A DNA stretch of 63,647 bases, filler included, from Octopus bimaculoides (GCF_001194135.2; 8 parts of 8 records of this genome joined end to end with filler, not necessarily neighbours in it); one strand, 5' to 3'; shown: positions 5,813-27,378, numbered from the whole stretch's first letter. Made by a program: numbers and translations. Notes: a model not told the origin generated them from the letters alone.

Positions 5813-7029
5813 AATAATAATAATAATGATAATAATAATTACAAAAATTATTATTATTTTACTTACAAGCAAAGCGACAAACATTTAAGGCGGGTTAATC
5901 TGAAATCATCGGGAGTAGGATGAAATCAATTTCATCCTAATACGCGATAATCTAAATGCGATTTCAAGTTACCCGGAGCTAAGCTGAAAGGGAGCGGGTA
6001 ATCTAACGTCGCAACAGCGGTGTCCCTTTCAGGAGCGAAACATTGTAATGTCAGTCATATATATATATATATATATACCATGGAGACAGGGTTAACCCCA
6101 GCCCTGTGAGTTGTGGGTGTCATGTCAGACCTAAGCCCGGGTCCCGCTGTTTTATATTTCTTTTGTTAAGTGTCTGCTTTGAACATGCAAACTCATGCAG
6201 CGAGAGTTTATTTGAATTTTCAAAGCGTTTTCGCTGAGTATATAAGACTGCATTCCCCTACAGCGCCCCCTGTGCGGGGGATGCTGGTCCTTCGTAAGAA
6301 TAGTCAACAGATTCCACTGTTACTAGAACAACCTGAAATGAAGTGCCTTGCCCAATGACACAACTCACCACCCGGTTCGAAAATTGAACCCACGATCAGC
6401 TGATCTTGAGTCCAACACTTAGATCACCAGCCTTACAAGCAATTAATACCCGACACTGTTGGCACTCGTGTTTATCTGAGTATACAGAAGAAGAAGGAGG
6501 AGGAGGAGGAAGAGGAGAAGAAGAAGAAGAAGAAGAAGAAGAAGAAGAAGAAGCAGAAGAAGAAGCAGCAGCAGCAGCAGTAGTAGTAGTAACAGCAGCA
6601 GCAGCAGCGGCAGGAGCAGCAGNNNNNNNNNNNNNNNNNNNNNNNNNNNNNNNNNNNNNNNNNNNNTTAATTAATTAANNNNNNNNNNNNNNNNNNNNNN
6701 NNNNNNNNNNNNNNNNNNNNNNGAGAGGAAGATCTGGGGGAATGGTAACGACAGGCTGAAGTGGAGAAGGGGTGGGTGGAATAGAAGTAGGAGGGGATGA
6801 AGTAGGGTTAGGAGGGCCGGTCGGGATGGTGGAGGGCTGGGAGGGAGGGGGTGGAGTGTGTGTATACATACATACATATATATATACATACATACATATG
6901 CTCATATGTAACTACGAGTATACACACATTCACACACACACATATACACACACAGACATACATATATGTACACTGAACCACAAAACAAACGCGAGACGTG
7001 TGTGACTGTGAAATATGTTTTAATTTCAT

Positions 7030-7601
7030 TATGTCAGATAAATTTTGATAAATCTGATAAAGTCAATTTCTTGGATGCACTCTGCCAGACCACAGTGGTT
7101 GGTTGTGATGTGTTCTGATAGTGGGCGGATCCAGCACATCGAAATTGTAGGGAGTGACATGTTCAATAGAATGTATGCCCTCCCTGAATGTTCAAAACGG
7201 CCATACATTGTCGGTACATGGAGTGCATAAGGTAGTTCACAAACGCCATTGGTCCCTGTTGGCACCATACCCTGAGGAAAGCTGCCTCTAGTTCCACCTT
7301 GAAAGCTGCCTCCAGTTCCGCCTCGAAACCACCTGGTTCAACCGTCTCTGGATTTCATCCCACAAGTGTTCAATTGGGTTCAAATCCGGGCTGAGAGAGC
7401 CGGTCATGGCATGGTTCCGATGTTGTGCTGATGCAAGAAGCCGATGGTGATTATGGCCGTGTGGGAGGGAGAATTGTCCTGCTGGTACATGTGGCTATAG
7501 TGAGGCGCTAAGATGGGCCCGATGTGAGGTCTTAGGACCTGGTCAACGTAGCACTGCGCTGTGAGGCCATTCCCTCTGCCTACACCAACATTTTGGAACA
7601 C
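7030..7601 (-). mobile_element. Tc1-family transposase C-terminal fragment, frameshifted
   Basis: Minus strand gives LTAQCYVDQVLRPHI..YQQDNSPSHTA followed by PALSPDLNPIEHLWDEIQRRL, the second D and the E region of a Tc1 DDE domain. Confidence 0.85.
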
Positions 7602-9897
7602 ATGGGGCTCAATTCTCTGATTCAGGCCTGTAGTACCTCAAACCATGATGCTTTGGTCACACCACGCGTCTGTGTCCATGACACATGCGTCTGTAGCGTT
7701 CACATCTCCTACGTCACACATTCACTCTGCCATTTACTCTGCCATACATATGTATGTGTGTGCGTGTGTCTTTGTTTCCCCCCCACCACCACCATTACCG
7801 CTCGTCAATCAGTGTTGGTGTGTTTAGGTCTCCGTAAGTTAGCAGTTCGATAGAATAAGTACTAGGCTTAAAAAAAAGTCCTGGCGTCGATTTGTTGGCC
7901 TAAAACCCTTCAAGCCAAGCTCCAGCATGGCTGAAGTCGAATGGCTGAAACAAATAACAGAATAAAAGAATAATAAGAAATTAAGCCAGAAGATGAATAA
8001 CACAATTCGCGAAGGAACAACAAAAGGTAATTTATCTAATATGAACTTTGCAATAACGAACGAATGTCATGCATGCTCTAATAACTACAACGGTATTAGT
8101 AATCTAAGAAAATACAGGGATAATACTGCTGACAGTAGGTACATTGAAAATTCTAATGTTCATATTATCCGTAACAACAGCGATGAACGTAACGAAAGAT
8201 ATTTAGGAAATACGAGAGATGGAAAGAAGAAGTATAAAGAATAAGGGTGCTGTAAATAGAGGACTAAAGAGAAATTGTACTTTCACAGACGAAAGAGTAT
8301 CTACTCTAGAAATTCAGTGCATGCATCGTATCTGAAGAAACAAGTATACAGTGAGTACCAAGGGAGGTGTGTACGAGTATATTGGGGCAGCTGTGGAGTT
8401 TTCTTCAGAATTCGATATCGGAACAATGTTGCCTGTTTCAGTTGAATTGATATAAAACAGTTAACCTCTCTAGCACGCTTCATATAGAGACAACAGGAAG
8501 ATGGAATTAGAAAATAGTGTTATATGATCCATAATAAAAAAGTGCACATCCGTATGATATATTGCTAGAACTTTTCCATTTAAGTTAAGAGTAATCTCTC
8601 TGCACTTTATTGTGATAAAATCTTAGTCAAGAGATGCTGCAAGACATAAGATGTAACCACAGACTCAAGTACACATGTTCCCGATATGATAGGGATATTT
8701 AATTATTCTGGCTATCAATAGTTCGCAAACATAATTTTTCTTTCCGTCGACATACATTGATACATCTCCCGACTGTGTAATATGGATAGCAAGGACGTGC
8801 CGCTTGGTTAGGTAATGTAGGCAGTGCCTGCTCTGAATGAAATAGATCGATAGTAACAGTTTCCTTTTATGGTAAAATATGCACACTATTCAATAAAACT
8901 ATGAAGGCTACTTTGATTAGCCCCTAACTTTCAATCGCAGTATTAAAGCTACGCATAATACTGCTGCAGTACACGTGCTACGTACATTCTTACAACAACG
9001 GGAGACATTTCGTAATTCGGTTGCAATTTATAGTGAACCGATTGACAACACAGCTTTCATTCTTTGGCGTAGCGTAAACATAGCTGTTATTCAGCACAAG
9101 ATAAGTCAAGACTGAATATACTTAAATAAATTGCGTTCTATTCTTGCCCACCACAAAAATCTATTCATATAGCAAGTTATTAATTTCCAATACGACCGTT
9201 ATGTTGGGTGACATGCTATGATTTGAGGGTTATATTTTGCCTAGAAATCTGTTTTCAACACCGAGATGAGGATTCATAATTTGGCAACATCTTCATGCGT
9301 ATGTAACGACGGAAATAGCGAATAGCGCTTTCAAAATCATTATACATTCACTCATACTCAACCATGCACACACACAAGCACAGTGGTTGCTGAGTATACA
9401 GTTATAGTTTATTATCGTTTAGTATTTGCTGAGATAAAATTCTATTAGAAGTTCTGCTTCTTATCGTTATATTTACATATAAATGCATCTATGTCATAAA
9501 GTATGTCCTGGAGATTTTGTTAATTGATTAATCCAGTATGATTATTATGATCAAATATATATAAAGGATTATATTTTACATTATATTAAGTAGTATTTAA
9601 GCCACTAGAAAAGTGATAACATATCCATTAATGAAAGGCGTGTTGTGATTTGATCACAAGTACACTCCCAGATATTAACGATTATATGTTAACGGTTTCT
9701 GCGAAAGAGTAGTGGGTAAAATGTTTTTATAGAAGCAGTTACACAATCACAAAACAGACACAAAGTTTATAAAAAAAAATTGCACACACTCAAAGTCGTA
9801 CATATGCAGGAGAGTATGTGAATCTTTGTACAAGAATAAACATTTATTTAACAAAGTTGAAAGATATTTACAAGGTTCATCAATCACTGTTTAATCT

Positions 9898-10956
9898 ATG
9901 GAATCACCAAATGAAGTAACCAAAATGTGGAAGACAAGTTCATGTAATATAGATATGGAAAGCACCTCTCTATCACTAAAAGCAGTAAAAGAAACCAGTC
10001 TAAATGGATATATACAGAAATGCAAACATGTAGCAATTGTATGCTATGTTCCTTCGAAATTTAACTTAGAAATCTGGAAAAAGTCTACCCTGAAAGCACG
10101 AATTTTTTATCTCTGTCTCCTTGTATTATATTTGGTTCCATCCTTTGATACATTTCGTCTTGCATGGTTCATAGTAGCAAATTTTTCATCAGAGAATAGT
10201 GGAGAGGTTTTAGCAAAACTTCTTGTTATGTTTATAAAATTATTCTCAACTGCAACTGCTCTAATCATTATCTGGAAACGAGATGATATAAATAACTTAA
10301 TCTAGGAATATGAAGACTATATACCAGTACATCAGGATGATGGATTTATGGAGAAATACTACAAAATTGGAATGCGTTCTCTCAAATCTACCGCCTGTTT
10401 AAATTTTCTGTCATCTTTTGTATTTCAAATTATTTTCCCCTTAGCTTTCCGGGACCCCCTTTATTTTCTGGACGTCTTAACTTTCCCTGTATCAGGAGAC
10501 AGCAATTTATATTTGCTTATGTTGACGATAAGTTTTCTAACTTCTACATTCAGCACATTTATTTTACTTCCTAGTATAACTCTAGTTGATACATTTGAAT
10601 CATTCTTCATTGATGAATATAATTATTTGTCAGAGATATTCAGAAACTTCATACACGAACATCAAGGTCATCAGAAACATATGTTCGAAGAACATGCAAA
10701 TCGCAGTGAAGGATTAATTGAACTAATTAACCAACATGCAAAACTTTGTCAATTATTAAATATTACAAACAAGGTATTTCAGATTGTCACTGCTGTGATA
10801 ATATTGCTGTACATGATAAACCTTTGTGCGATAGCATATGAACTTTCAAATAACCTAGTCACTGCCAAAAGCTATACATTCCAAATTGTTCCTGCAGCAA
10901 TGAGTGCAATATTTTGCTTATGTCGGCTCCATAAAGGAATGAAGGTTAATGTCAGT
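9898..10956 (+). pseudogene. Gustatory-receptor-like (GRL/7TM ion channel) large coding exon, copy 1, with one in-frame TAG at 10303-10305
   Basis: ORFs 9898-10305 and 10348-10974 are in the same frame (offset 450 nt) and align end to end with copies 2 and 3. About six hydrophobic segments; GR-like 'LINQHAKLCQLLNITNKVFQ' before TM5; ends at a GTAAGT donor (10957). Confidence 0.75.
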
Positions 10957-11330
10957 GTAAGTATTTCTTTGTAGCATTTTCTAATGAATAATTGTTTAAT
11001 GATTAAATATCTTCTCTATTTTTTATAAAATATGTATATTTAACGATATTCGCAGACATGTCTGTTTTGCTGAGATGGCCGCTCAGCGACAACGAAATTT
11101 CAGCTTCGCTCTCATACTGAGGTGCATCGGTCAAGTGTTTTCTACAGTAGCCTCATGCGGACTAATCCCTTGTGCGTAAATTTAGTAGACGAAAATCTTT
11201 GTAAAAACCGTGACAAACACATTTGTATACACACACAGACAGACATACAAAGATACACAGACACACACACATACACACATATACATACATATAAATATAC
11301 ATACGTATGTATATATGAATATAAACTCAG

Positions 11331-11383
<53 letters not shown>

Positions 11384-11835
11384 AAATTATGTATATGTGT
11401 AAATATAAACATAATTGTTAGTTTTATAAATGCGTTTGTGTGTAAGAAATCGCTTGCGATCATGTTTGAATATAAGCTATTCATTGATGGATTGACGAGG
11501 AACACTAATTAATCTTTAATAGAATCATAACATTAGCTAATTATATTGAATGTATGTATAAATGACATCATCCTGATATGACAATCACGCATGAAACTCA
11601 CTAATTATAAGCGCATTATATTAAAAGCTAACTGATTCTAAATGACATGCATTAAAAATATTGGAAGAATACATTAGGGCGTGGTAAACATTAGTGTATA
11701 GACAACCAGAGTTTATGTTGGATCAAAAATTATTTTCTTTATTTGCCACAGGATTTAATGTTAAACTATTATTCGGACGCTTAGTCCTACAAAATCTATG
11801 ATGAGATAATTCAATTTAAGCAGATACCAATTTTT

Positions 11836-12918
11836 ATGGCCTTATCATCTTTACCAAAAATTGTTTCAAACATGGAATTATTACATAGAAATGTGGAAGT
11901 AAGTGACTCTTACAATATAAATACCGATCAATCTAAATCAAATGCGATAAAAGATACTATTCTGAATTCATTTCTGCTAAAAATTAAAAAGCTTTCCATT
12001 ATGGGACTCTTTCCTTACGGGATAAATGTAGAAATGTGGAAAGTTTCTGGATTAAAGACACAAATACTTTATATATTAATCCCATTCGTGTATTTAATTT
12101 CTATGCTTGATATTATACGTTTGCCTTGGTTTATCATAATAAACCATTCGAAGGAAAATCTCGGGTCGCTCTTTGGGAAAAGTTTTCTTCTTTTGTTGAA
12201 GACATATCCATGTATAATTTCCATAAACATGTTTTGGAACAGATTTAATATCAACAGGTTAATTCACGAGTTCGGTACCTACATTCCAATAAACCAAAAT
12301 GCTAACTATATGGCTCGATATAACACCCTGGGTACATATTTTATCGTATATAACGCATGCTGTATTGTCGTGTTGACTTTTGCGGTCCACGTCATTTTAC
12401 CTATGACACTGGCAGATCCGGATTTCTTCTTTGATGTCATGGCTTTCCCGATATTACGTGGGAGCGAATTATTTTTAATTAGTTTGATAATTAATTGGAT
12501 GATAAATACATTGGTGACAATTCTCATTACACCAAATTATATCGTACTTGTTGGATTACAGTTAATCATGATAGATGAGTTTAAATTTTTATCACAGACA
12601 CTTCAAGTCTATTTTCCGGAAAACCAAGACGACCATACAAATATATCTGCCACCCAAACTCCTTGCGTTGATATATTAGATAAGATAATTAAGCAGCATG
12701 GTAAACTTTGTCGCTTACTTAAGATTAACAACAAAGCGTCTCATGTTACAGTCGCCATTACAGTTCTTCTGTTCATTATTACTTGTTGTGTACTAGCTCA
12801 TGAAATCTCCAATGGGTTAATAAATGAGAAGGGATATATAATCCAACTGATTTTTGGAATGGGAATAGCATCAGCTTGTTTCCTAATAATATCCAAAGGT
12901 CTTCAGCTCAATTTCAAT
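11836..12918 (+). CDS. GRL/7TM ion channel large coding exon, copy 2, intact; C-terminal exons not located
   Basis: Open 361-codon exon; paralog motifs DPDFFFDVMAFP, IDEFKFLS, IIKQHGKLCRLL, KGYIIQ; phase-0 donor AAT|GTAAGT at 12919. The ATG homologous to copies 1 and 3 is at 11872. Confidence 0.8.
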
Positions 12919-13493
12919 GTAAGTATTTAGTTTGCTATTTTTCCGCTTCAGTTATATTAAATGCCGATTCGTTCATAAATGCTGTTTAAATTCAAGTATT
13001 AGTCGTCATTTTTTTTAGTGGTGTTAGTGTGAGTTGTTACTGCACCTCTTTACCCAGAAACTCGAGTCTGTGCGTATCACGTCAGATCGACGATGGGAAG
13101 GATGACTTCCTTTTGCAAATACCGACAGGGTACAGTAAGTGTGTCAATAGCCAGCTGGAGGAGATGTTCTCCTGGGGCTAAAAGCAACAGTAGCATTCAC
13201 CCTTAGGGTCTAGTCGCATTTAAGTGGCAAATATACTTCACCTTGTCGTGCAGTTACGGTTAATACCTCTTTCAGAGATTTAACATTATATATATNNNNN
13301 NNNNNNNNNNNNNNNNNNNNNNNNNNNNNNNNNNNNNNNNNNNNNNNNNNNNNNNNNNNNNNNNNNNNNNNNNNNNNNNNNNNNNNNNNNNNNNNNNNNN
13401 NNNNNNNNNNNNNNNNNNNNNNNNNNNNNNTATATATATATATATATTCTTTGATATGTACTTTGATTGGTTTCGGTCAGTATTGGCGTACGC

Positions 13494-13740
13494 CATGTCT
13501 AACTTAATAGCACCGCTTGGCAAAGTCATTCGAATCAGAATTCGGACAACATGGCCCACATGAGGAGATAGTTATAATTTATGGTGACATATCCGGGTGT
13601 CGGAGGTTTACCAGGAGTTTTTGAAGGAATTTGTCCAAAGCCTTATCGAACTTTATTGGGCCTGTTTCTGCTTTAATGTATTTTGGTGTATTTAATGTAT
13701 TTAATATGATGGTTGGTTGTGAACTTAATGTGGCAGTCCC
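13494..13740 (-). mobile_element. CR1/L2-like LINE 3' fragment
   Basis: Minus-strand ..KFDKALDKFLQKL.. RT C-terminal remnant; shares 'gccatgtctaacttaatagcacc' with the LINE copy at 61952. Confidence 0.6.
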
Positions 13741-13753
13741 AGGAAAGGGAAGA

Positions 13754-13927
13754 ATGCTACTGCCATTTAGCCCCATGAAACACCGCTTCCAGTTGGCTAT
13801 GTGACTCAAGCGTTGTGTCCAGTTGGCTATGTGGCACAAGCGTTGTGTCCAGTTGGCTATGTGACACAAGCTTGTGTCACACAGCCAACTGGAAACGGTG
13901 TTTCCTGAGGCTACGTAGCAGTAGCAT
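13754..13927. repeat. Imperfect palindromic (MITE/foldback-like) element with internal 30-bp triplication
   Basis: Left arm atgctactgcc..gaaacaccgcttccagttggct pairs with right arm agccaactggaaacggtgtttc..gcagtagcat; centre AAGCTT (13868-13873); the unit ccagttggctatgtg.c.caagc.ttgtgt occurs three times. Confidence 0.8.
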
Positions 13928-14613
13928 AAATATATCATATTACTTGGTACGTCTCTGAAGCGGCCCGAAGATGGAATTAAAAAATTTTTGTATTATTTTC
14001 GTGGTATTTTAGTACGTCCTTTTAATGTTTTATCATCTCAAATTTTTATTACACCAAAGTATTATAACTTTCAAATGTAAATTCACTGTTTTATGTATCG
14101 CATCGATATTTATCCATTTATGTGCATTTTTATATTTATATTCTTGTATATGTTTCAGTCCAATGACAGTGGCCATGCTGGAGCACTTGGAATTTTTATA
14201 TTCGTTTTATAAATGTAGAAGAATATATGTATATATTTGATTTTCGAGTGTGGTTATTAATTACGTTCCTCTAGTTTTCGCTTGCATTGCCTCCATTGAA
14301 ATTATTAAGTGGTACACACACACATACACACACACACATATATATANNNNNNNNNNNNNNNNNNNNNNNNNNNNNNNNNNNNNNNNNNNNNNNNNNNNNN
14401 NNNNNNNNNNNNNNNNNNNNNNNNNNNNNNNNNNNNNNNNNNNNNNNNNNNNNNNNNNNNNNNNNNNNNNNNNNNNNNNNNNNNNNNNNNNNNNNNNNNN
14501 NNNNNNNNNNNNNNNNNNNNNNNNNNNNNNNNNNNNNNNNNNNNNNNNNNNNNNNNNNNNNNNNNNNNNNNNNNNNNNNNNNNNNNNNNNNNNNNNNNNN
14601 NNNNNNNNNNNNN

Positions 14614-14658
<45 letters not shown>

Positions 14659-15617
14659 GTGTATATGCATGTATATATAACAAAGCATTGAAACACCGAT
14701 TGAATTAGTATGTTAGCGGGGATGAAGCAAATCCCGTAAGGAGAATTGTTGTCAAATCATTATACATGATCGACTGAATACCCATAGAAAACTAAATGAT
14801 GTGCCGAACAAATGATTCAAATCTTGTGTCTTTGAAACTTCAAGTAAGCACTATGTGCCATTAAGCTATGTGAACATCCGCAACAGATACTATATTTATA
14901 AAAGCTAATATCTTAACATAGCAAAAATATTCTCATTCGACAATTAAAACAACACCACATTTTTGTAGCTGATATCTTTGGGCGAGATTTACACCGTAAG
15001 ATTCTTGTCATTGGTCTTTTTTCATTTAAATACAATAATTGCAGAGTTTTCTTTAAAAATGGCTTTAATATCTTGTCTCAATGTCAGTTCTGTGGGTTAC
15101 TTAACATTTGTTCCTCACTGGAACTCACACTAGGTTTTGAGAAACGTTGAATATATTCACCCACAGCCATTTATAAACGATAGATATACAGTACATATGT
15201 AAATATACTTTGACTAGTATCATTTTAATTACGAAACAAAATGTGCTTGTACGCGTGGATCGATGTATGTATGTTATTCGTATACTTATTAATTGTATTT
15301 GCTGAAAGAAACCTTATTAATTAGATGAATTATCGTTTATATCCTTAAGTAAATGTAAATCTTTTACATAGATGGAAAGTGGTAAAATAAATAAAGGCGT
15401 GATAATATTTTAATGGAAATTGCATTCATGGCTAATAGTATTTATTATACATCCACTGACGCAGTAAAGGCAGTTTTCAAAACATTGCGCAGTAGTTCAC
15501 ATGTAATCATTGAACCTAAGTTCAAATATAAATCTTCTGCCTAGTTTGTATTCAGGAGAATTTAGATATTCAAAATTTGTAATAACTTAGCAAGGTTTAT
15601 CAACGGCTGTTTCAATT

Positions 15618-16652
15618 ATGGAAACATCTGAAACAGTCACTAATATTTGGAAATCACATTCTGTTCAGATAAACATAAACCTCTCTCCCAAAACAGCAAA
15701 TGAGACCACATTCTTTGAATATCTGGAGAAAATAAGACGCTTTACAATTGTTTGTTCTATTCCTTCCAAAATGAATTTAGACATTTGGAAAAGAACTGAG
15801 CTGACAGCACGCATTTTTTACCTATGTCTCCCTGTCATCTATTTAATCTCAGCATTTGATATTTTACGGTTCATATGGTTTATTGTAGAAAGTTTCTCAT
15901 CAACGAATGATAAATATATTTTAGGTAAATGTTTTTTCTTTTTGATGAAAATACTACCAGAAATACTTGTACTAATCATTGTCTGGAAGCGAACGCACCT
16001 CAACGAAATGATCAGCGATGCTAAAACTTTTATTCCAATATGCCCAAAGAATATATTGATGAAGAGATATATTAGATTTAATTCACATTTTGTCGCAATT
16101 CATTTAGCCATTAATGTTGTTTTATCTACTATATTCCAAATTATTTTGCCAGTAGTTCTTGTTGACCCGGAATATTTTCTCGATGTGGCATTCTTTCCAC
16201 TGTCACGTCCGAAAAATTTCATTTTAATATTAAATTTCTTGACCGATGTATTCCATACGATACATATAGTACCATGTACCACATTTTCCACTATAATATC
16301 GGCAACTTGTATAGAAGAATTTAAATATTTATCACACAAGTTTAGAAACTACATGCAGGAATATGAAGACTGTGGACTCTTTCAGAAACCTATAAATCTC
16401 AATGAAAAGATAAGTGAAATAGTTAACCATCATACTAGACTACGTCAATTAACGAAACGCCTAAACTCGGTATTTCAGTTTTGGAATGGCACGACCGTAT
16501 TACTTTTCCTTATTATCTGTTGTGTCACAGCTTATCAAGTAGCAAATGGCTTAACTAATACAAAAGGTTACGTACTACAAATTGCCATTGGAATAATGAT
16601 TGCACTATCTTGTATACATGTGATAGTCAATGGACTGGTGTTTAACTCCAGT
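15618..16652 (+). CDS. GRL/7TM ion channel large coding exon, copy 3, intact; C-terminal exons not located
   Basis: Open 345-codon exon; closely paralogous to copy 1 (ARIFYLCL, DPEYFLDV..FP, IEEFKYLS, IVNHHTRLRQL, KGYVLQI); phase-0 donor AGT|GTAAGT at 16653. Confidence 0.8.
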
Positions 16653-17220
16653 GTAAGTACCTTTTTTCTTCTGTATATTTAATGAGAATTTGCTTCATGT
16701 TTTTCTTTTGTAGATTCTTAATGAAATATAAAATTGAGAGATGGTAAACAAAGAAATATCATTTGTACAAAATATTCAAGTAAACATATTTGTCGCTAGA
16801 ATCCCTACATCTACAAAAATTAAACACGTTTTTTACATACCATGATTAGTAGAATGCAACGATACTTGATCTACGTCAGAATATCCAGAGTTTAAGTGAT
16901 GAAGTGTTTGATAATTGTATAATATTTTAAGGCTATGAACATTGTAACAACAATGCAATCGGTAAATACAATAGTTTATATGATAATGTTTTTTATACAG
17001 AGTTCACCTTTTTGATCTAGATGTAACTTTGTTCATGCGTCTGATGTAATTATCGGTTAAATTCCATAAATTATTAAGAGAAACAGTGCATTTTATTAGT
17101 ACATACCAATTTTTAACCCGATTAAGGGAACAAGAAATAAGGTGATTAATTTACACAGAATTTGATAAGGGTCTAAAGTTCGGTCATATAATTTTTGTCG
17201 CATTATTTTTCCTGCGATGA

Positions 17221-17445
17221 AAGGCGGTGAGCTGGAAGAACCGTTAGCGCGCCGGGTAAAATGTTTAGCAGTATTTCGTTTGCCTTTGGGTTCTGAGTTC
17301 AGATTCCGCCGACGTCGACTTTGCCTTTCATCCTTTCGGAGTCGATAGATTAAGTACCAGTTGCGTACTGGGGTCGATCTAATCGACTGGCCTCCTCCCC
17401 GAAAATTTCGGGCCTTTTGTCTACAGTAGAAAATATTATTTCTTG
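17221..17445 (+). mobile_element. tRNA-derived SINE (family A)
   Basis: aaggcggtgagctggaagaaccgttagc..ttctgagttcagattcc (B-box-like)..aagtaccagttgcgtactggggtcgat; same family as 50331 and 56399. Confidence 0.8.
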
Positions 17446-19811
17446 CGATAAAGCAGACCTTCAATCCAACATTTATTTTGTGATTCATTTTTGAAACCTT
17501 CATTATTGAAGCTTCACACTGGGCCGATATTTTTTTTTTATTTAACTAAGTTTCTTAGGCACCACTGTAAGAAAGCATAATAGGTTTAGTATATGATAAT
17601 TAATATCTTTTCTGCTGTAGGCAACTGGTACTTAATTTATCGACCCCAAAAGGATGAAAGGCAAAGTCGACCTCAGCGGAATTTGAACTCAGAACGGAAA
17701 TATATGATGATTAATATTATCATAGCAAAAAAACATGGTACTTGCAGTGTGGTTTCTCGTTTGCTTCAATGAAGTTGAGAGATATTAGTGTCACACAAGC
17801 GGGGCAGGACAACAGATAAAGGCAGGGTTAATATGAACCACGTCTTTATAGCGGTGAAAATGAATTTGTTTATAAACAAAGCCTCTACAGAGAAAACAGC
17901 AAAGTTACAGACGCAGACGATGACAATTCAAAACAAAAACTAAAAACCCAGACAACGCTGGAGGTAACCTCTGGTCCGGGTGGAGGGAAGGGTTTTGATA
18001 AGTAATTATCATCATACCACTGAAGCTTAATTAAATGAAGTTATTTAGAAAAAGGTTTTTAATTTTAGCCGATGTTACTAGTTCTTGGATGGTAAGTGTT
18101 ATTGTCGAATACATATACAGTTTTGAATATATATATATATATATATATCTTCCATGAGGCACATAAAATATACGGTAACACATTTTCAGCTGATAGAGTC
18201 ATGATCACTATTCAGCTTGGTTGAACAATCAATCGGGATGTACAGTAAGGTTTGTACTATTCATATTTTCAAATGCTGAATGAAAGACATGGATCGTGAG
18301 ACCTGCATTTGGTTGATTTTCTTGAGCCACCATATCATCCTTGCAATGCCTTTCCGTCACAAGTTCATCCACTCACAGAGGAGTGGATTCAAGCAACGTG
18401 AAATGAAGGATTTTGCTCAACAACACAACGTACAGCCCGTTTATGAATCGAAACCGTGATCTTGCGATAGTGAGTGCAGCACCTAACCGTTTCGATGTTA
18501 CAGAAGGAGTCCTATAACGTTTAAAACACAAGCCCGGACTCACTCACACATATAAACACATGCATACATTCAGCCACAAGCACAAACACACTCATATATA
18601 ATAACACACACACACATACTTTTTTTTATATTAGAGCATTATGGAATACTTCAGAGAGAGCATAATCCATTTTTGCATTCATTACAATTTGAGAAATAGA
18701 AAATGACGTGGTGTGTTGTGTGGTTTTGAACAAGTGCCATGAATTTGAAATTACTTGCCCTATCGTTGATAATATGCACCCACACAGAAGTCATGAAATT
18801 GCATGTTGTTTAAGAAATACCAAGCTGAATCGAAGAGAGATGCCGGTCAACAAAGATCATGCAAATGTAGAATCCGGGACAACCGCCCACTAGACTGTAC
18901 CTAGCTCGCAAAATCGACAGTGCCTAGCACCAGCTTTGAGTCAAACAGCAGTGTTGAATATAAAACACATATATGAGCAACAGAATTCATGTTCACGTTC
19001 AAAAACAGTTATTACAAGCATAAATATTCTTTTGTCATCTCTGATAAAAACGAGCTACGGCTTTGTTGAATTTTATATGATTAATGCGTGTGACAAGTCT
19101 CACGAATTCAAAATTAACTGACATAGGAACGGGGTCTCCAAGCCAAAGATGCCGTTTGTTCTTTAAGCGAAAATTTTCACCCAAGGCAGTAACAGTTTGA
19201 ACAAAGGAATTGAAATGCTAGCACCTTGTATACACGCGGTTATGTATTTCTCATGTCAATAAATCCCCCCTTGAATTGCGTCGTTGCTATGAAAAAAAAC
19301 GTTGGTTCCGAAATATTTAATATGGTTTACTGATATTTGTTTTAAATGCATGGGGGTGCGTCTATGTGAGTGTATGTGTGTATATATGCATATGCGTATA
19401 TGTAACCATGCATGTAAAATTATCTGTATAATGTCTTGTGTAAGTATGAGTGTACTTATGTGAGTATGTATGTTTTGTAATTGATGTGCTTAATATCCGC
19501 TTAATTGACTCTATACCCGCTCAGCTTGATCCCTCTTATAGCATTTCTTTACTTTGTGGAATGATCCCCTATAAAGTTTGAATCTTATGAACACTATTCA
19601 GTGCCCATTATTTATATTATTTACATTTGACGTATATTTGTCCTCATCTTCTTTGTTGTTAACACAACGTTTCGGCTGATATACCTTCTAGCATCCATCA
19701 GGTGTCTTGAGGAAATTTCGAAACCTGGAATCTCATTCCTAAGGTTTTTTTCGATGTTATTATTATTACTATTATTATTATTATTATTGGCATGTAATTC
19801 CAGGCAATGAA

Positions 19812-19859
<48 letters not shown>

Positions 19860-19866
<7 letters not shown>

Positions 19867-20196
19867 CAAAAAACGACAAAGAGCTAGAAACACTACTACA
19901 GACAGTACACAGCTTTACCAAGGAAATAGAAATGAAATTCGGATTAGAAAAATGTGCCAAAGCAACCCTGAAAAGAGGAAAATTAGTTAAAAGTAGCAAT
20001 ATAACACTAAATAAAGCCAATGAAATAAGAGAACTAGACAAAAGCCAACCATATAAGTATTTAGGAGTCAATGAACTAGATAGGATACAACATACACAAA
20101 TGAAAGAAAAAATAAAGAAAGAGTACTATAGACGAGTTAGATCAATACTAAAAACAGAGCTCAATGCTAAAAACAAGATAATGGGTATCAACACTT
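19860..20196 (+). mobile_element. R4/Dong-like non-LTR retrotransposon RT fragment
   Basis: MKFGLEKCAKATLKRGK..YKYLGV..KEYYRRVRSILKTELNAKNKIMGINT is typical of the post-YADD region of R4-clade RTs; truncated by a gap. Confidence 0.8.
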
Positions 20197-21791: not shown

Positions 21792-23683
21792 ATATATAGA
21801 CATAAAGTAACTTATACATGTGTGTGTTTATGTGTAAATGTATGTGAGTGTGTATGAATAAAATCTGTGTATGGATGAATGGGTTGATGAAGAACTGACA
21901 ATGCCACTGAATGCAACACAGACATTCATCAAATGTTGCCTGTCTGCCTGTCTGCTTGTTTGTCTGTCTGTCAGTCTGTCTGTCAGTCTGGCTGCCTGTC
22001 TGCCCTTTCAGACATGACAACAACAACAAAAAAATAGTATTACAGGAGAAAGGGAGAGAAGAAAGAAAAAGTATTTCGAAACCCTGCCAGAAACTACAAG
22101 GAACTAAGTTGGACGCCATTGTGCGTATGTATGTGTGCGTGCGCGATAGCGTGTGTGTGTGAATGTGTGTGTCTGTGTACGCGCGCGCGATGGGCAGATA
22201 TGTGTGCGTTAATGTTGTATGTTTATGTGCGTGAGCATGCGTCAGTTATTGTTCGTTATATTTCCGTTTTTGAAAAAAAAATGTGAACAACATTACATAC
22301 TCAAAATATTTTCTGCTGAGGTGAGTTTTTTTAATGGAAAAAAAATACTTCGTTTCGTGGTGTTTTTTTTTTTTTTGTATTTCTTTTAATTTTTCCTCTT
22401 TCTTCTCTCGTTTTATGTTCCTATGTTTAATGTCAATATCAATGCGTTTGCTTATATATGTGTGTGTGTTTGTGTCTACGTGTGTACGTGTAAGTATGTG
22501 TGTGTATGTATTTATATGTACACAAGTATATATATACATACANNNNNNNNNNNNNNNNNNNNNNNNNNNNNNNNNNNNNNNNNNNNNNNNNNNNNNNNNN
22601 NNNNNNNNNNNNNNNNNNNNNNNNNNNNNNNNNNNNNNNNNNNNNNNNNNNNNNNNNNNNNNNNNNNNNNNNNNNNNNNNNNNNNNNNNNNNNNNNNNNN
22701 NNNNNNNNNNNNNNNNNNNNNNNNNNNNNNNNNNNNNNNNNNNNNNNNNNNNNNNNNNNNNNNNNNNNNNNNNNNNNNNNNNNNNNNNNNNNNNNNNNNN
22801 NNNNNNNNNNNNNNNNNNNNNNNNNNNNNNNNNNNNNNNNNNNNNNNNNNNNNNNNNNNNNNNNNNNNNNNNNNNNNNNNNNNNNNNNNNNNNNNNNNNN
22901 NNNNNNNNNNNNNNNNNNNNNNNNNNNNNNNNNNNNNNNNNNNNNNNNNNNNNNNNNNNNNNNNNNNNNNNNNATATATATATATATATATAAGCGCAAG
23001 AGTATTTGTGTGATAAGTAGCTTGCTTACCAACCACATGGTTCTGGATTCAGTCTCACTGCGTGGCACCTTGTGCAAGTGTCTTCTAGTACAGCCTCGTG
23101 AGTGAATTTGCTAGACGGAAGCTGAAAGAAACCCTTCGTTTACGTGTGTGTGGGGAGGGGGGTGTTTCGCCTCCCCAACATCGATGCAGCGTGTTTACGT
23201 CCTTGTAACTTAGCGGTTTCGGCAAAAGGTACCAGTAGAATAAGTACTAGATTTTCAAAGAATAAGTGGGATTTATGGAGGGTTAAAGTTGGGAACAGAA
23301 ACAAGACATTGGAGACATACAAGGAAACCGAACGAAAACAAATATGGAAGGTCGTTAGACCAGAACGAGGGTAAAATAGCGAACGCTGGAGAAATATTTT
23401 CTTTGTCAAGGGAAAAGATAGAAGATAGAGATAGGTAGGATACGTCCAGTCTCTAGGACAGCCCTGAAAGAAAAGAAAGAGGATGACGTGAGGAAAAGAA
23501 AGATAGACGATGGTCACGTGTGAGCAACGAGAGAGACTAAAGGAGAAAGAAGCGGAAAGAGATAGAGAGTGAGAGAGAGGCAGATAGAAAACGGTGAAGG
23601 GGAGAAAAGGAATTAGAGAAAGGATGAGAGAGAAAACGATAGGGGGAGAGAGCAGTATAGGGTAGAGTCGCATATATGTATAT

Positions 23684-23782
<99 letters not shown>

Positions 23783-24089
23783 TAAATATATATATATACA
23801 TATATATATAATGTATTTAGCACAGCATTATTCAATCTAGCAGCTATTTTTTAAGAACACAAATTGTGATTCAGAGGTGATTTAATTGCTATTTCTTACA
23901 AGTGCGGCTTTTGTTAATGATACTGTTAGTAGTAATGATACCGTTAATGATACCGTTAGTTCAATGTGATGTTAATGTTGCTGATGTTGTTGTTGTTTAT
24001 ATTATTGAAATTTAGCCCTTGGTCAGCCCTGTTCAAGCAGATCTATGAATTAAGGGCGTTCCAGATATAACCGTCTCGTTTGCTACAAC

Positions 24090-25960
24090 TTGGAAAATGA
24101 TGTGTTTACAAAATGGAGACCTGTTTACAAGCAGGGTAAATATATTTACAAAAAGAGACGATGTGTTTACAAAATGCTGTTCTGTTTGCAAAGAGAGAAA
24201 TATATTTACAAAGAAAAAGTGATGTGTTAATAAAAATTTTGATGTATTTACAACCATGTCGTTATTTTTAGAAATAGTATTTACGAAAATGTCTGTACAA
24301 AATTTGTTTCTGGAAATATCTAAATGATTGATTAAATGTCGATGATTTTATAGAAATGTCATCGTGATTGTTAAAATGTCGCAGAAGTTGATGGATTTAT
24401 AAAATTCGACGTTTATAAAATATTGGTATACTTATAAAATGCTAATACGATATGTTTACAAAATGTTCACAAAAATGTTGATTCACATACAGAATATTAA
24501 TGTGTTTATATAATTGCCAAATTGTTTCCAAAAATGCCCGTGTGTTTACAAAATGTATACGGTTACACAAATTGGTATATTGACGAAAATGTCGATGAAT
24601 TTACAAAACTATTGATGTATTTTCGAAGTTGTTTATGTACTTGCGGAAATGTTGATTTCTGTATAAAATATTCCATTCATGTGTTTACGAAAATATCTAC
24701 GTGTTTACAACAGTATTGATGTTTCCAAAATAATATGTGTTTAGAAAACATTGATGTATTTACAAAACTAGCACTGTTTACAAATTGTTGATGTGATTCC
24801 TATATCTGCTTGTTTGCAGAAATGCTGAAAGATGTATAAATTCATATATTTATAAAATTTTGCTATATTTATAAAATATGATTATAGAATTCTGAGCGAT
24901 TATTAAATGTTTGTTTTTGTTTACATAAATGTTTATTTATTTATAAAATTCGATGTTTTTTTAATTTTTGGCGTGTATATAAATATTATTTCTTTATAAA
25001 AATGTTTACAAAAATGTTGACTATCAAAATGCTGATCTATTTATAAAATGCTTGGGGTCTTTAGTTACATGACCGCTTGTTTACAAAATGTTGCTATGAT
25101 TAAATAATATATTGACGCGTTTATAAATATATCAATGTGTTTACAAAAATATTGATATACTTTACAAAATTGACACGTGATTACAAAGAATTGGCGTGTC
25201 TACAAAACTTATTATGTTTACAAAATGGTTACATATTTAGGAAAACATCTATGAGATTACAAAAGAGCGATGACTTTACAAACATGTTTATAAAACTACT
25301 GATTTTTTTACAAGTATGTCGGTATATGCAAAATATTAAAGTGTTTTCAAATATATGTAAATATAGATGTAAAAAGAAGAAATGTTTATTATCTATAAAA
25401 TGTTGCATTAAAAAATGCCCATATTTCACAAAACATTTTATACTTTTTAATTTGTTTTAATGTTCATGTCTAAAGCCATGCTGAAATACCTCGTACAAAT
25501 TCATTGACAGTGTTGGTTTTCGACGACGTTGATAAGTTCACCAAAAAAGTGATACTCTTACAAAATACCGATATGCATTCAAAAATGCTAATGTAACTAG
25601 CGAGACATTGATCATCATCCGGTCGGACGACTTGCCCAGATCAATGAAACAATAGTGATTGAGAAGTGGTTCACATGCCTCGAAGCACTGGAAACCCTCG
25701 AAACAGGGCTCCTCTACCGGATACATTTAACGTTACGGGGATTTGAAACCGGCGAGATTAAATTTCTGTTAACTACAGCTAAATGCTGACATATTTAGGA
25801 AAACGTTGGCGAGTTTACAATAATATCGAAGTGTTTGTAAAATATTTACGTGATTATAAAATGTAAGTCTATATTTAAAATATGTTATATTCAAAAAAAT
25901 ATGGATATTTTCATAAAATTTTGACGCGTTTACAAAATTATATGTTTACAATATGTTCAT
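24090..25960 (+). repeat. Cryptic degenerate satellite rich in (g)tgtttacaaaat
   Basis: Recurring variants of gatgtgtttacaaaat at roughly 20-nt spacing over ~1.9 kb, interrupted by a more GC-rich segment near 25500-25760. Confidence 0.65.
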
Positions 25961-26812: not shown

Positions 26813-27378
26813 GAGGCAGGCAGGCAGGCATACAGGCAGACAGACAGACAGGCAGGCAGACAGGCAGACAGACAGACAGACAGACAGGNNNNNNNNNNNN
26901 NNNNNNNNNNNNNNNNNNNNNNNNNNNNNNNNNNNNNNNNNNNNNNNNNNNNNNNNNNNNNNNNNNNNNNNNNNNNNNNNNNNNNNNNNNNNNNNNNNNN
27001 NNNNNNNNNNNNNNNNNNNNNNNNNNNNNNNNNNNNNNNNNNNNNNNNNNNNNNNNNNNNNNNNNNNNNNNNNNNNNNNNNNNNNNNNNNNNNNNNNNNN
27101 NNNNNNNNNNNNNNNNNNNNNNNNNNNNNNNNNNNNNNNNNNNNNNNNNNNNNNNNNNNNNNNNNNNNNNNNNNNNNNNNNNNNNNNNNNNNNNNNNNNN
27201 NNNNNNNNNNNNNNNNNNNNNNNNNNNNNNNNNNNNNNNNNNNNNNNNNNNNNNNNNNNNNNNNNNNNNNNNNNNNNNNNNNNNNNNNNNNNNNNNNNNN
27301 NNNNNNNNNNNNNNNNNNNNNNNNNNNNNNNNNNNNNNNNNNNNNNNNNNNNNNNNNNNNNNNNNNNNNNNNNNNNNN

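What the first reader, a model, noticed from the sequence alone, without database searches (positions are those of the whole stretch)
10957..16658. Variable-exon array: identical phase-0 donors and no private TM7 exons suggest shared constant 3' exons
All three exons stop at the homologous codon just after TM6 (KGMKVNVS|, KGLQLNFN|, NGLVFNSS|) with GTAAGT at 10957, 12919 and 16653. This points to selection on the donor. GR-family proteins need further small exons encoding TM7 with the TY.....QF-type motif. The 880 gap-free nt between copies 1 and 2 contain no such intact exon, and I found none between copies 2 and 3 (only two short gaps flanked by TA arrays). The simplest model is alternative large exons spliced to one common C-terminus, as in Drosophila Gr28b/Gr39a and clustered protocadherins. 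This would give receptors with different ligand pockets on one shared pore and assembly helix. I could not locate the constant exons; they may lie in gaps between 20 and 30 kb.
Basis: partly seen in the sequence, partly recalled or inferred. Interest (0 to 1): 0.8.

Follow-up and report, generated by a model that had tools for sequence, protein, structure and literature searches.

The report
Octopus taste-receptor-like gene, alternative exons

Summary
Three paralogous + strand exons (9898-10956, 11836/11872-12918, 15618-16652; 31-37% aa identity) each encode six hydrophobic helices. Each ends at the same codon with a phase-0 GTAAGT at 10957, 12919 and 16653.

No exon for the seventh helix lies in the 13.5-kb piece or in 23 kb of gap-free orthologous Octopus vulgaris DNA. 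The profile that failed to find one does find such exons at two paralogous loci.

The shared-3'-exon model is supported by the ortholog. Octopus sinensis LOC118764605 isoform X2 joins the copy-1 ortholog, at this same donor, to a 70-aa C-terminus. That C-terminus is identical to the one in isoform X1, which starts from a paralogous large exon more than 10 kb downstream. Both coding ranges end at one coordinate more than 105 kb away. Synteny places the window at the 5' start of this array.

Full-length proteins pass Pfam 7tm_7, carry TYhhhhhQT, and fold like insect OR/GR channels. The neighbouring gene shows the layout directly in DNA: two large exons, then three small phase-0 exons.

Caveats:
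- Copy 1 has an in-frame TAG here and a frameshift in O. vulgaris.
- The donor position is family-wide, so it does not discriminate between models.
- I saw no transcript data for copies 2 and 3.

This is a known architecture (Drosophila Gr39a/Gr28b) in a new phylum, and moderately interesting.

The parts
9898..10956 (+). Variable exon 'copy 1' (N-terminus to TM6). It is the ortholog of the large exon of O. sinensis LOC118764605 isoform X2 (P0022, whose model starts at the Met at 9955). Here it is a pseudo-exon.
   Evidence: 77% aa identity to P0022 over 334 residues. Six hydrophobic segments. Pfam 7tm_6 E=6e-6. dN/dS against O. vulgaris is 0.86, not different from 1.
10303..10305 (+). In-frame TAG that disables copy 1.
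   Evidence: O. vulgaris reads CAG and O. sinensis P0022 has Q at this site. O. vulgaris instead has a 7-nt deletion at the equivalent of about 10422.
10957..10962 (+). Phase-0 splice donor GTAAGT of copy 1.
   Evidence: P0022 is spliced at the orthologous position (..INDS|AHQLVDH..).
10963..11835 (+). Spacer between copies 1 and 2. It is gap-free, AT-rich and microsatellite-rich, and holds no TM7 exon.
   Evidence: The O. vulgaris spacer is about 6.8 kb and also has none.
11836..12918 (+). Variable exon 'copy 2', intact. The real start is probably the Met at 11872, because ATG 11836 is TTG in O. vulgaris.
   Evidence: ORF. 86% aa and 92% nt identity to the intact O. vulgaris ortholog at L003 16966-18048. 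dN/dS 0.58, Fisher p=0.04. Start codon.
12919..12924 (+). Phase-0 splice donor GTAAGT of copy 2.
   Evidence: Identical in O. vulgaris.
13296..13430 (.). Assembly gap inside a (TA)n microsatellite in the copy 2 - copy 3 spacer.
   Evidence: TA repeats on both flanks; no coding sequence abuts it.
14347..14613 (.). Assembly gap inside a (CA)n/(TA)n microsatellite in the copy 2 - copy 3 spacer.
15618..16652 (+). Variable exon 'copy 3', intact. Its closest annotated relative is the large exon of LOC118764605 isoform X1 (P0021, 50% identity).
   Evidence: Pfam 7tm_6 E=9e-5.
16653..16658 (+). Phase-0 splice donor GTAAGT of copy 3.
16659..20196 (+). Start of the long intron leading to further variable exons and the constant exons. 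It holds SINE-like and retroelement fragments and no family exon.

Best explanation
The piece is the 5' end of an octopus gustatory-receptor-like (GRL; 7-transmembrane ion channel superfamily) gene. It is orthologous to Octopus sinensis LOC118764605.

The gene is a tandem array of large alternative exons. Each has its own ATG, encodes the N-terminus through TM6, and ends in a strong phase-0 donor. Transcripts that include one large exon splice from its donor over all downstream large exons to a single block of three small phase-0 exons. In O. sinensis that block lies at the far end of a coding range of more than 105 kb. The small exons encode intracellular loop 3 and TM7 (..GISIGGCFVINPASVLTLIGSIITYSIVAYQT..).

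Isoforms therefore differ in the part that forms the ligand pocket in insect OR/GR structures. They share the TM7 helix that lines the pore and holds the tetramer together.

In this genome copies 2 and 3 look usable. Copy 1 has been knocked out by a nonsense codon; in Gr39a, where each large exon has its own ATG and donor, such a loss leaves the other isoforms intact.

Shown:
- exon anatomy and donors;
- absence of local TM7 exons;
- orthology and synteny;
- identical C-termini of the two annotated isoforms;
- family membership and fold;
- the same layout read directly in DNA at the neighbouring gene.

Inferred:
- that copies 2 and 3 are actually transcribed and spliced this way;
- that each exon has its own promoter;
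- the functional roles of the two parts, taken from insect structures.
For: (1) Three paralogous 6-TM exons end at one codon with GTAAGT.

(2) There are no C-terminal exons in the piece or in 23 kb of gap-free O. vulgaris ortholog. The detection method works. A leave-one-out HMM built only from paralogous C-termini finds all three constant exons in L001 (E 2e-10, 7e-5, 3e-3) and two of three in L004.

(3) P0022 (isoform X2) is the copy-1 ortholog joined to 70 aa that are identical to the C-terminus of P0021 (isoform X1). Both coding ranges end at the same coordinate. X2 starts more than 10 kb upstream of X1, and the range exceeds 105 kb.

(4) Synteny. L001 40593-47784 (O. sinensis, downstream of LOC118764606) aligns collinearly with L003 1-7385 (O. 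vulgaris) at 92-98% identity. Window 8043-11221 and 11358-13052 align to L003 at 87% and 92%. Window 8043-8192 aligns to the end of L001.

(5) The neighbouring gene, read in DNA, has large exon A (L001 10001-11002, GTAAGT) and large exon B (23267-24277). Three small exons follow at 27093-27161, 30166-30255 and 37719-37784, all phase 0. O. sinensis P0014 uses exon A. O. bimaculoides A0A0L8FL56 (P0015) uses the exon-B ortholog with the same small exons.

(6) Family. P0022, P0021 and P0014 score 35.1, 33.8 and 31.7 bits on Pfam 7tm_7 (cut-off 26.6). P0022 also scores 36.5 on 7tm_6. The AlphaFold model of P0022 has pLDDT 78 and pTM 0.76. Its top 19 PDB matches are all insect OR, Orco or GR chains, mostly TM 0.57-0.70 (three Gr43a chains 0.45-0.46).

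(7) Copy 2 is intact in two species with dN/dS 0.58.

(8) The Gr39a precedent has four large exons of six TMs plus three small exons for TM7, with pseudo-exons in some species (PMC2204066).
Against: - No transcript data were available. X1 and X2 are automated NCBI models, and an intron of more than 100 kb is long.
- Only the copy-1 ortholog and one paralogous exon are annotated as isoforms. The copy-2 ortholog is not annotated, and no copy-3 ortholog was found.
- Constraint on copy 2 is modest (omega 0.58, p=0.04).
- Copy 1 is disabled here and in the O. vulgaris assembly.
- The constant exons of this genome were not seen, because they lie outside the piece.
- AG sites that look like acceptors sit shortly upstream of several of the ATGs. 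The exons may therefore not be true first exons.
Confidence: 0.8

Rival explanations
1. Copies 2 and 3, like copy 1, are orphaned exon duplicates that are no longer used. Only some large exons of the array, those annotated in O. sinensis, make receptors.
For: Copy 1 carries a TAG here and a 7-nt deletion in O. vulgaris, with dN/dS 0.86. Constraint on copy 2 is weak (0.58, p=0.04). NCBI annotates no isoform from the copy-2 ortholog. No copy-3 ortholog lies within 5 kb downstream of copy 2 in O. vulgaris.
Against: Copies 2 and 3 keep open frames of 361 and 345 codons with six hydrophobic helices and consensus donors. Copy 2 is intact in two species at dS of about 0.11, with its donor unchanged. 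Chemoreceptor exons often evolve fast and are lowly expressed, so automated annotation misses them.
Confidence: 0.1
2. The 3' exons are shared, but the large exons are internal, mutually exclusive exons fed by one upstream promoter and 5' leader exon (Dscam-like choice). They are not alternative first exons with private promoters (Gr39a, protocadherin or UGT1A-like choice).
For: Polypyrimidine-AG sites lie just upstream of the ATGs. Examples are tttaagcag| 12 nt before ATG 11836, and ttttgcag| 18 and 11 nt before the ATGs of L001 exons A and B. Similarity between paralogs starts only about 27 nt upstream of the ATG.
Against: Copies 1 and 3 have only weak sites (caag|g). No 5' exon was seen. 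Every large exon keeps its own ATG. In the known GR cases and other variable-first-exon clusters, each exon has its own promoter (PMC2204066 for the structure; promoter usage is from general knowledge).
Confidence: 0.12
3. Each copy is an independent gene with its own TM7 exons. These are hidden in the assembly gaps or are too diverged to recognise.
For: Two gaps of estimated length lie between copies 2 and 3. A family member with a private C-terminus exists (L004).
Against: The 880-nt spacer between copies 1 and 2 is gap-free and empty. The gap-free O. vulgaris ortholog has none in 6.8 kb after copy 1 or 5 kb after copy 2. The leave-one-out HMM detects diverged paralogous C-terminal exons elsewhere. 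Three exons would have to fit within about 400 nt of microsatellite gaps. The copy-1 ortholog is annotated as spliced to distant shared exons.
Confidence: 0.03
4. Transcripts are not spliced at these donors and give truncated 6-TM proteins. Read-through ends after 3-9 codons (VSISL*, VSI*, VSTFFLLYI*).
For: Stop codons follow each donor closely.
Against: Without TM7 the protein lacks the part that completes the Pfam domain and the channel fold. The consensus donor is conserved across paralogs and species. Stops soon after a donor are expected in 70% A+T intron sequence.
Confidence: 0.03

Closest known systems
Drosophila Gr39a (also Gr28b and Gr23a): alternatively spliced gustatory receptor loci
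   Same: Several tandem large exons each carry their own start codon and 5' donor and encode six TM domains. Three small shared exons follow and encode TM7 and the C-terminus. No acceptor is used before the small-exon block. Exons are gained, lost and pseudogenised between species (PMC2204066). [quoted passage not shown]
   Different: The host is a cephalopod mollusc, not an insect. The scale is far larger: the coding range runs more than 105 kb past isoform X1's start codon. The TM7 motif is TYhhhhhQT rather than TYhhhhhQF. At least three such genes sit side by side (LOC118764605, LOC118764606, LOC118764607). Isoform use rests on gene models, not experiments.
Octopus sinensis LOC118764605 isoforms X1/X2 (NCBI 'uncharacterized protein')
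   Same: This is the orthologous gene. X2's large exon is the ortholog of window copy 1 (77% aa) with the same donor position, and flanking synteny agrees.
   Different: The window comes from a different Octopus species, about 87-92% nt identical to O. vulgaris, the sister species of O. sinensis. It is possibly O. bimaculoides, which is my inference. Copy 1 is intact in O. sinensis but carries a stop here. Orthologs of copies 2 and 3 are not annotated as isoforms.
Clustered protocadherins / UGT1A variable-first-exon clusters
   Same: An array of variable exons is spliced over long distances to a few constant 3' exons, so diversity comes from exon choice rather than whole-gene duplication.
   Different: The protein family is unrelated. 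Per-exon promoters, conserved promoter elements and stochastic choice were not tested here. The number of variable exons is unknown; at least four are implied.
Invertebrate GRLs outside insects (cited to Robertson 2015, Saina 2015, Eyun 2017 in PMC7746228 and PMC5850775)
   Same: This is a non-insect member of the GR-like family. Molluscan GRLs, for example in Aplysia, are already recorded.
   Different: In the searched library I found no description of cephalopod GRLs or of alternative large-exon arrays in molluscan GRLs. Robertson 2015 itself was not in the library, so I could not check it.

Membership tests
GR / GR-like family (Pfam 7tm_7; 7TMIC superfamily) | Significant match to the family profile (7tm_7 PF08395 or 7tm_6 PF02949) above the curated cut-off | tested here: met
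   Window exons alone are marginal. Copy 1 scores 26.0 bits on 7tm_6 (cut-off 25.8), copy 3 scores 22.1, and copy 2 has no hit; the matches cover profile positions 4-246 of 313. With the constant exons attached the match is clear. Ortholog P0022 scores 35.1 bits on 7tm_7 (cut-off 26.6) and 36.5 on 7tm_6. P0021 scores 33.8 and P0014 scores 31.7.
GR / GR-like family (Pfam 7tm_7; 7TMIC superfamily) | Fold of the insect OR/GR channel subunit | tested here: met
   The AlphaFold2 model of P0022 (copy-1 ortholog plus constant exons) has pLDDT 78.3 and pTM 0.76. The top 19 Foldseek PDB matches are all OR, Orco or GR chains (8z9a, 8v02, 6c70, 7lic, 8zdz, 8jme, 8uvu), with probability 1.0; most have TM 0.57-0.70, and three Gr43a chains have 0.45-0.46. 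The PDB sequence-profile top hit is OR10 8v00, E=0.0013.
GR / GR-like family (Pfam 7tm_7; 7TMIC superfamily) | [quoted passage not shown] | tested here: met
   The first intron is seen in all three window exons as phase-0 donors. All three are read in DNA at the paralogous neighbour L001, with exon boundaries 11002/27093, 27161/30166 and 30255/37719, all phase 0. The same pattern occurs in L004. The second and third introns of the window's own gene lie outside the piece.
GR / GR-like family (Pfam 7tm_7; 7TMIC superfamily) | TM7 motif TYhhhhhQF | tested here: inconclusive
   The motif is not in the window. Orthologous and paralogous constant exons carry TYSIVAYQT, TYVIVVLQT, TYILVVIQT and TYAIVVLQT. 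This is TYhhhhhQ followed by T instead of F.
Alternatively spliced GR locus of the Gr39a/Gr28b type | Two or more tandem large exons, each with its own ATG, six TMs and a 5' donor at the homologous position | tested here: met
Alternatively spliced GR locus of the Gr39a/Gr28b type | No TM7-encoding exons between the large exons | tested here: met
   with positive controls at L001 and L004. The caveat is about 400 nt of assembly gaps inside microsatellites.
Alternatively spliced GR locus of the Gr39a/Gr28b type | One downstream block of small exons shared by all large exons | tested here: met
   This was shown for the ortholog, not for the window itself. P0021 and P0022 have an identical 70-aa C-terminus and the same end coordinate. 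It is seen in DNA at neighbour L001. The window's own constant exons lie beyond 20196 and could not be fetched, because the gene range exceeds 100 kb.
Alternatively spliced GR locus of the Gr39a/Gr28b type | Transcripts joining each large exon to the shared exons | not testable with these tools
   Only automated gene models are available: NCBI X1/X2, and UniProt A0A0L8FL56 for the neighbouring gene. No RNA-seq could be accessed.
Variable-first-exon clusters (protocadherin / UGT1A type) | A private promoter upstream of every variable exon | not tested
   Only a leader of about 27-30 nt is conserved between copies 1 and 3. AG sites upstream of some ATGs leave a shared 5' exon possible.

The most novel reading that the evidence does not exclude
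The gene could be a very large array of many 6-TM exons spread over more than 100 kb. With the adjacent multi-isoform genes LOC118764606 and LOC118764607 it would form a super-cluster. Exon or promoter choice would then give each chemosensory cell one receptor isoform, with every isoform built on the same pore helix. That would be a protocadherin-style solution to receptor choice, arising in the GR-like family of cephalopods independently of the small insect loci.
Probability: 0.2. Interest if true: 0.65.

Novelty: new member of a known kind. Interest (0 to 1): 0.4.

Why it matters
Octopus chemosensation research has centred on the nicotinic-receptor-derived chemotactile receptors (PMC11526382). 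The GR-like channels of cephalopods are essentially undescribed in the literature I could search.

This work shows that octopus GRLs keep the ancestral gene structure of three phase-0 introns. It also shows that several are organised as Gr39a-like alternative-exon arrays with shared TM7 exons. That gives a corrected gene model for loci that annotators truncate or mis-join; O. vulgaris CAI-type model P0005 is one example. It raises the true receptor count above the gene count. It also poses a testable question: is this architecture ancient in the family, or convergent between insects and cephalopods?

The shared TM7 implies that isoforms could co-assemble through a common pore and anchor helix.

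Tried and rejected
Searches that found nothing:
- The word-indexed protein search with copy 2 found nothing. The exhaustive representative search was needed.
- Exact look-ups of the window's own read-through ORFs for copies 3 and 2 found nothing. The source assembly and species of the window were therefore not identified directly.
- Look-ups of P0015 and P0020 found nothing.
- DNA of LOC118764605 could not be fetched because its range exceeds 100 kb. I could neither read its constant exons nor count its variable exons.
- A regex for TY.....QF-type motifs on both strands gave only implausible hits in repeats or inside the large exons.
- The weak HMM hits in the window (8928-9074, E 0.7-1.2; 17779-17940, E about 3) were rejected as noise.
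- Rfam and tRNA scans of the piece were empty.
- Pfam on the flanking ORFs at 7593, 7993 and 19932 was empty.
- Literature searches for cephalopod or molluscan GRL arrays returned nothing specific.

Ideas considered and rejected:
- That the identical donors are by themselves evidence for shared exons. The donor position is family-wide and also occurs in a gene with a private C-terminus (L004).
- That L003 could resolve the window's gaps. Alignment between the species stops at window 13052.

Full report
**1. What is in the sequence**

The piece (6723-20196) carries three paralogous open reading frames on the + strand. Copy 1 is 9898-10956, copy 2 is 11836-12918 and copy 3 is 15618-16652. They share 31-37% amino-acid identity. 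No further copy or fragment lies anywhere in the piece on either strand.

Each copy has six hydrophobic segments, with a long hydrophilic stretch between the fourth and fifth. Each ends a few residues after the sixth. The last codons, KGMKVNVS, KGLQLNFN and NGLVFNSS, align in one column. Each is followed at once by GTAAGT, at 10957, 12919 and 16653, in phase 0.

The 34 nt around the junction is the only stretch that the repeat finder pairs among the three copies.

GTAAGT alone is not rare here: there are 8 on the + strand against about 4.7 expected. What matters is its position at the homologous codon.

**2. The assembly gaps**

The two gaps (13296-13430 and 14347-14613) lie in the spacer between copies 2 and 3. 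Simple TA or CA/TA repeats flank both sides of each. A fully read (TA)n sits between copies 1 and 2 and looks the same. No genuine reading frame touches either gap, so continuity or frame across them does not affect the three exons. They could in principle hide a very small exon.

**3.

Copy 1 has an in-frame TAG at 10303-10305. The O. vulgaris ortholog reads CAG there, and the O. sinensis protein has Q. The O. vulgaris assembly instead has a 7-nt frameshifting deletion further on.

dN/dS between the window and O. vulgaris for copy 1 is 0.86, not different from 1 (p=0.53). For copy 2, which is intact in both species, it is 0.58 (p=0.04). Copy 1 is therefore a decaying pseudo-exon in this genome.

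The first ATG of copy 2 (11836) is TTG in O. vulgaris. The Met at 11872 aligns with the starts of copies 1 and 3 and is the likelier start.

**4. Family**

Alone, the exons give only marginal Pfam matches to 7tm_6. These cover profile positions 4-246 of 313, meaning the last 70 positions are missing.

A word-indexed search with copy 2 found nothing. An exhaustive HMMER search with a profile of the copies found 20 representatives. Most are read-through ORFs from short Logan contigs, and they continue '..VS..' at the very same column. This shows that the GT(A/G)AGT donor after TM6 is family-wide.

Four hits are spliced gene models carrying about 70 further residues of the type IHDIVEDLY...GISVGGFFVI.PSS.LT.FGS.FTYVIVVLQT.

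Full-length relatives pass the curated Pfam cut-off for 7tm_7, and P0022 also passes 7tm_6. An AlphaFold2 model of P0022 (pLDDT 78, pTM 0.76) retrieves only insect OR, Orco and GR chains as its top 19 PDB matches, most with TM 0.57-0.70.

The TM7 motif is TYhhhhhQT, against the canonical TYhhhhhQF (PMC9998090). The proteins are gustatory-receptor-like members of the 7TM ion-channel superfamily.

**5. No private TM7 exons**

All of the following were negative for the window:
- a motif regex;
- tblastn with five family C-termini;
- tblastn with P0021 and P0022, which carry this array's own constant region;
- a profile HMM against six-frame fragments.

The best E value was about 0.7-1.2. The same holds for 23 kb of gap-free orthologous O. 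vulgaris DNA (L003). That stretch includes 6.8 kb after copy 1 and 5 kb after copy 2.

The method is sensitive enough. A leave-one-out HMM built only from paralogous C-termini finds all three small exons at L001 (E 2e-10, 7e-5, 3e-3) and two of three at L004. L004 is a family member with one large exon and its own three small exons within 8.8 kb. A private C-terminus, where one exists, is therefore nearby and detectable.

**6. The orthologous gene**

A profile search and a follow-up search returned two NCBI proteins of Octopus sinensis. P0021 is LOC118764605 isoform X1 (421 aa) and P0022 is isoform X2 (403 aa).

The first 333 residues of P0022 are the ortholog of window copy 1. They are 77% identical to the window and 95-97% identical to O. 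vulgaris L003. P0022 is spliced at the same donor (..GIKINDS|AHQLVDH..).

The large exon of P0021 is a paralog, 50% identical to copy 3. The last 70 residues of the two isoforms are identical. Both coding ranges end at the same coordinate. X2 begins more than 10 kb upstream of X1, and the range exceeds 105 kb.

**7. Synteny**

- The 3' flank of the neighbouring gene LOC118764606 (L001 40593-47784) aligns collinearly, at 92-98% identity, with the first 7.4 kb of L003.
- Window 8043-11221 and 11358-13052 align with L003 at 87% and 92%.
- Window 8043-8192 aligns with the very end of L001.

The window is thus the 5' beginning of the LOC118764605 array, about 12 kb downstream of the stop codon of LOC118764606. 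The copy-2 ortholog lies inside the intron of isoform X2, on the same strand.

**8. The same layout read directly in DNA**

In L001, large exon A (10001-11002, donor GTAAGT) and large exon B (23267-24277, donor GCAAGT in O. sinensis) are followed by three small exons. These are at 27093-27161, 30166-30255 and 37719-37784, each bounded by AG/GT in phase 0.

O. sinensis P0014 joins exon A to these small exons, skipping B. O. bimaculoides A0A0L8FL56 (P0015, named 'Gustatory receptor' by UniProt) joins the exon-B ortholog to the same small exons.

A third adjacent gene, LOC118764607, has at least three isoforms (P0020 is X3). These three phase-0 introns are the ancestral GR gene structure (PMC9998090).

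**9. Interpretation**

The architecture matches Drosophila Gr39a. That gene has several large exons, each with six TMs, its own start and a 5' donor. Three small constitutive exons for TM7 follow. Large exons are gained, lost and pseudogenised between species, and each large exon has its own ATG and donor, so the authors expect the other isoforms still to be expressed when one large exon is mutated (PMC2204066).

By analogy with insect OR/GR structures (my knowledge of those structures), the variable part builds the ligand pocket. The constant part supplies TM7, which lines the pore and anchors the tetramer. In the model these are helices 351-366 and 381-402.

However, its argument from 'selection on the donor' is not diagnostic, because the donor is an ancestral, family-wide intron position. 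The constant exons are also not nearby: in O. sinensis the coding range runs more than 105 kb past isoform X1's start codon.

**10. What is not shown**

- I had no transcript data. X1 and X2 are automated models.
- Use of copies 2 and 3 is inferred from intact frames, conserved donors, modest purifying selection on copy 2 and their position in the array.
- It is open whether each large exon has its own promoter or is fed from a shared leader. AG sites with pyrimidine tracts lie just upstream of several ATGs, and similarity between paralogs begins only about 27 nt before the ATG.
- The window's species was not identified. Its divergence from O. vulgaris and O. sinensis resembles that of O. bimaculoides proteins (inference).

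**11. Novelty**

The kind of locus is well known in insects, and the ortholog already carries two isoforms in NCBI's automated annotation. In the searchable literature I found no description of cephalopod GRLs or of such arrays in molluscs. Robertson 2015 was not available to check.

I rate this a new member of a known kind, of moderate interest. The size of the array and the cluster of three such genes leave room for a more interesting protocadherin-like receptor-choice system. That would need the steps listed under next steps.

Noticed in passing
window 10303-10305; L003 about 9620: Copy 1 is disabled by different lesions in two species. The window has an in-frame TAG; O. vulgaris has CAG and O. 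sinensis has Q at that site. The O. vulgaris assembly has a 7-nt deletion. The exon is intact in the O. sinensis protein model. dN/dS is 0.86.
   Followed up: yes
window 11836 vs 11872: The first ATG of the copy-2 ORF is TTG in O. vulgaris. The Met 12 codons downstream aligns with the starts of copies 1 and 3 and is probably the real start.
   Followed up: partly
window 11815-11835, 9865-9897, 15585-15617; L001 9975-10000 and 23245-23266: Pyrimidine-rich AG sites that look like acceptors lie 11-33 nt upstream of the ATGs of the large exons. The one before copy 2 is in frame with the upstream donors. Similarity between paralogs starts only about 27 nt before the ATG. A 5' leader exon, shared or private, is possible.
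   Followed up: partly
L001 24278: Large exon B of the neighbouring O. sinensis gene has a GCAAGT donor instead of GTAAGT. It is either a GC-AG intron or a weakened exon. NCBI annotates only exon A there, while the O. bimaculoides model uses the exon-B ortholog.
   Followed up: no
L003 10001-13065 (O. vulgaris gene model P0005): The deposited O. vulgaris annotation joins the last 48 codons of the copy-1 ortholog to an unrelated 42-aa exon at L003 12937-13062. This is probably a mis-annotation caused by the frameshift and the distant constant exons.
   Followed up: partly
window 17225-17389 and 17617-17700: An inverted pair of SINE-like elements (84-nt arms, 89% complementary, 248 nt apart). 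Related copies lie in the introns of L001 (25001-25165, 29025-29181 and others). The 135-aa minus-strand 'ORF' at 17096-17503 runs through one of them. No tRNA or Rfam match.
   Followed up: partly
window 13754-13927: A palindromic element (58-nt arms, 86% complementary) containing three tandem 30-nt units at 13788-13877. It may be a MITE-like insertion in the copy 2 - copy 3 spacer.
   Followed up: no
window 19871-20196: This stretch is 87% identical, in inverted orientation, to L003 22206-21881. It holds an open frame (19932 to the end of the piece, MKFGLEKCAKATLKRGKLV...) that looks like a retroelement fragment. It has no Pfam hit and is cut by the edge of the piece.
   Followed up: partly
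window 6880-7733: This stretch matches L001 38522-39652 in inverted orientation, at 81-94% identity. That is the region just downstream of the last exon of LOC118764606. It includes the only GC-rich stretch of the piece (52% at 7223-7722). It is either an inversion between species or a transposed element.
   Followed up: no
window 6723-20196: GTAAGT occurs 8 times on the + strand and never on the - strand, against about 4.7 expected per strand. This strand asymmetry was not explained.
   Followed up: no
L004 (O. vulgaris OX597821.1:106245077-106273906): About 300 kb upstream on the same chromosome and strand lies another family member. It has a single large exon and its own three small exons (14528-14602, 17204-17299, about 18768-18830). 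The deposited model P0019 skips TM2-TM6, so it is probably mis-annotated. The GRL genes thus form a chromosomal super-cluster of at least 340 kb.
   Followed up: partly
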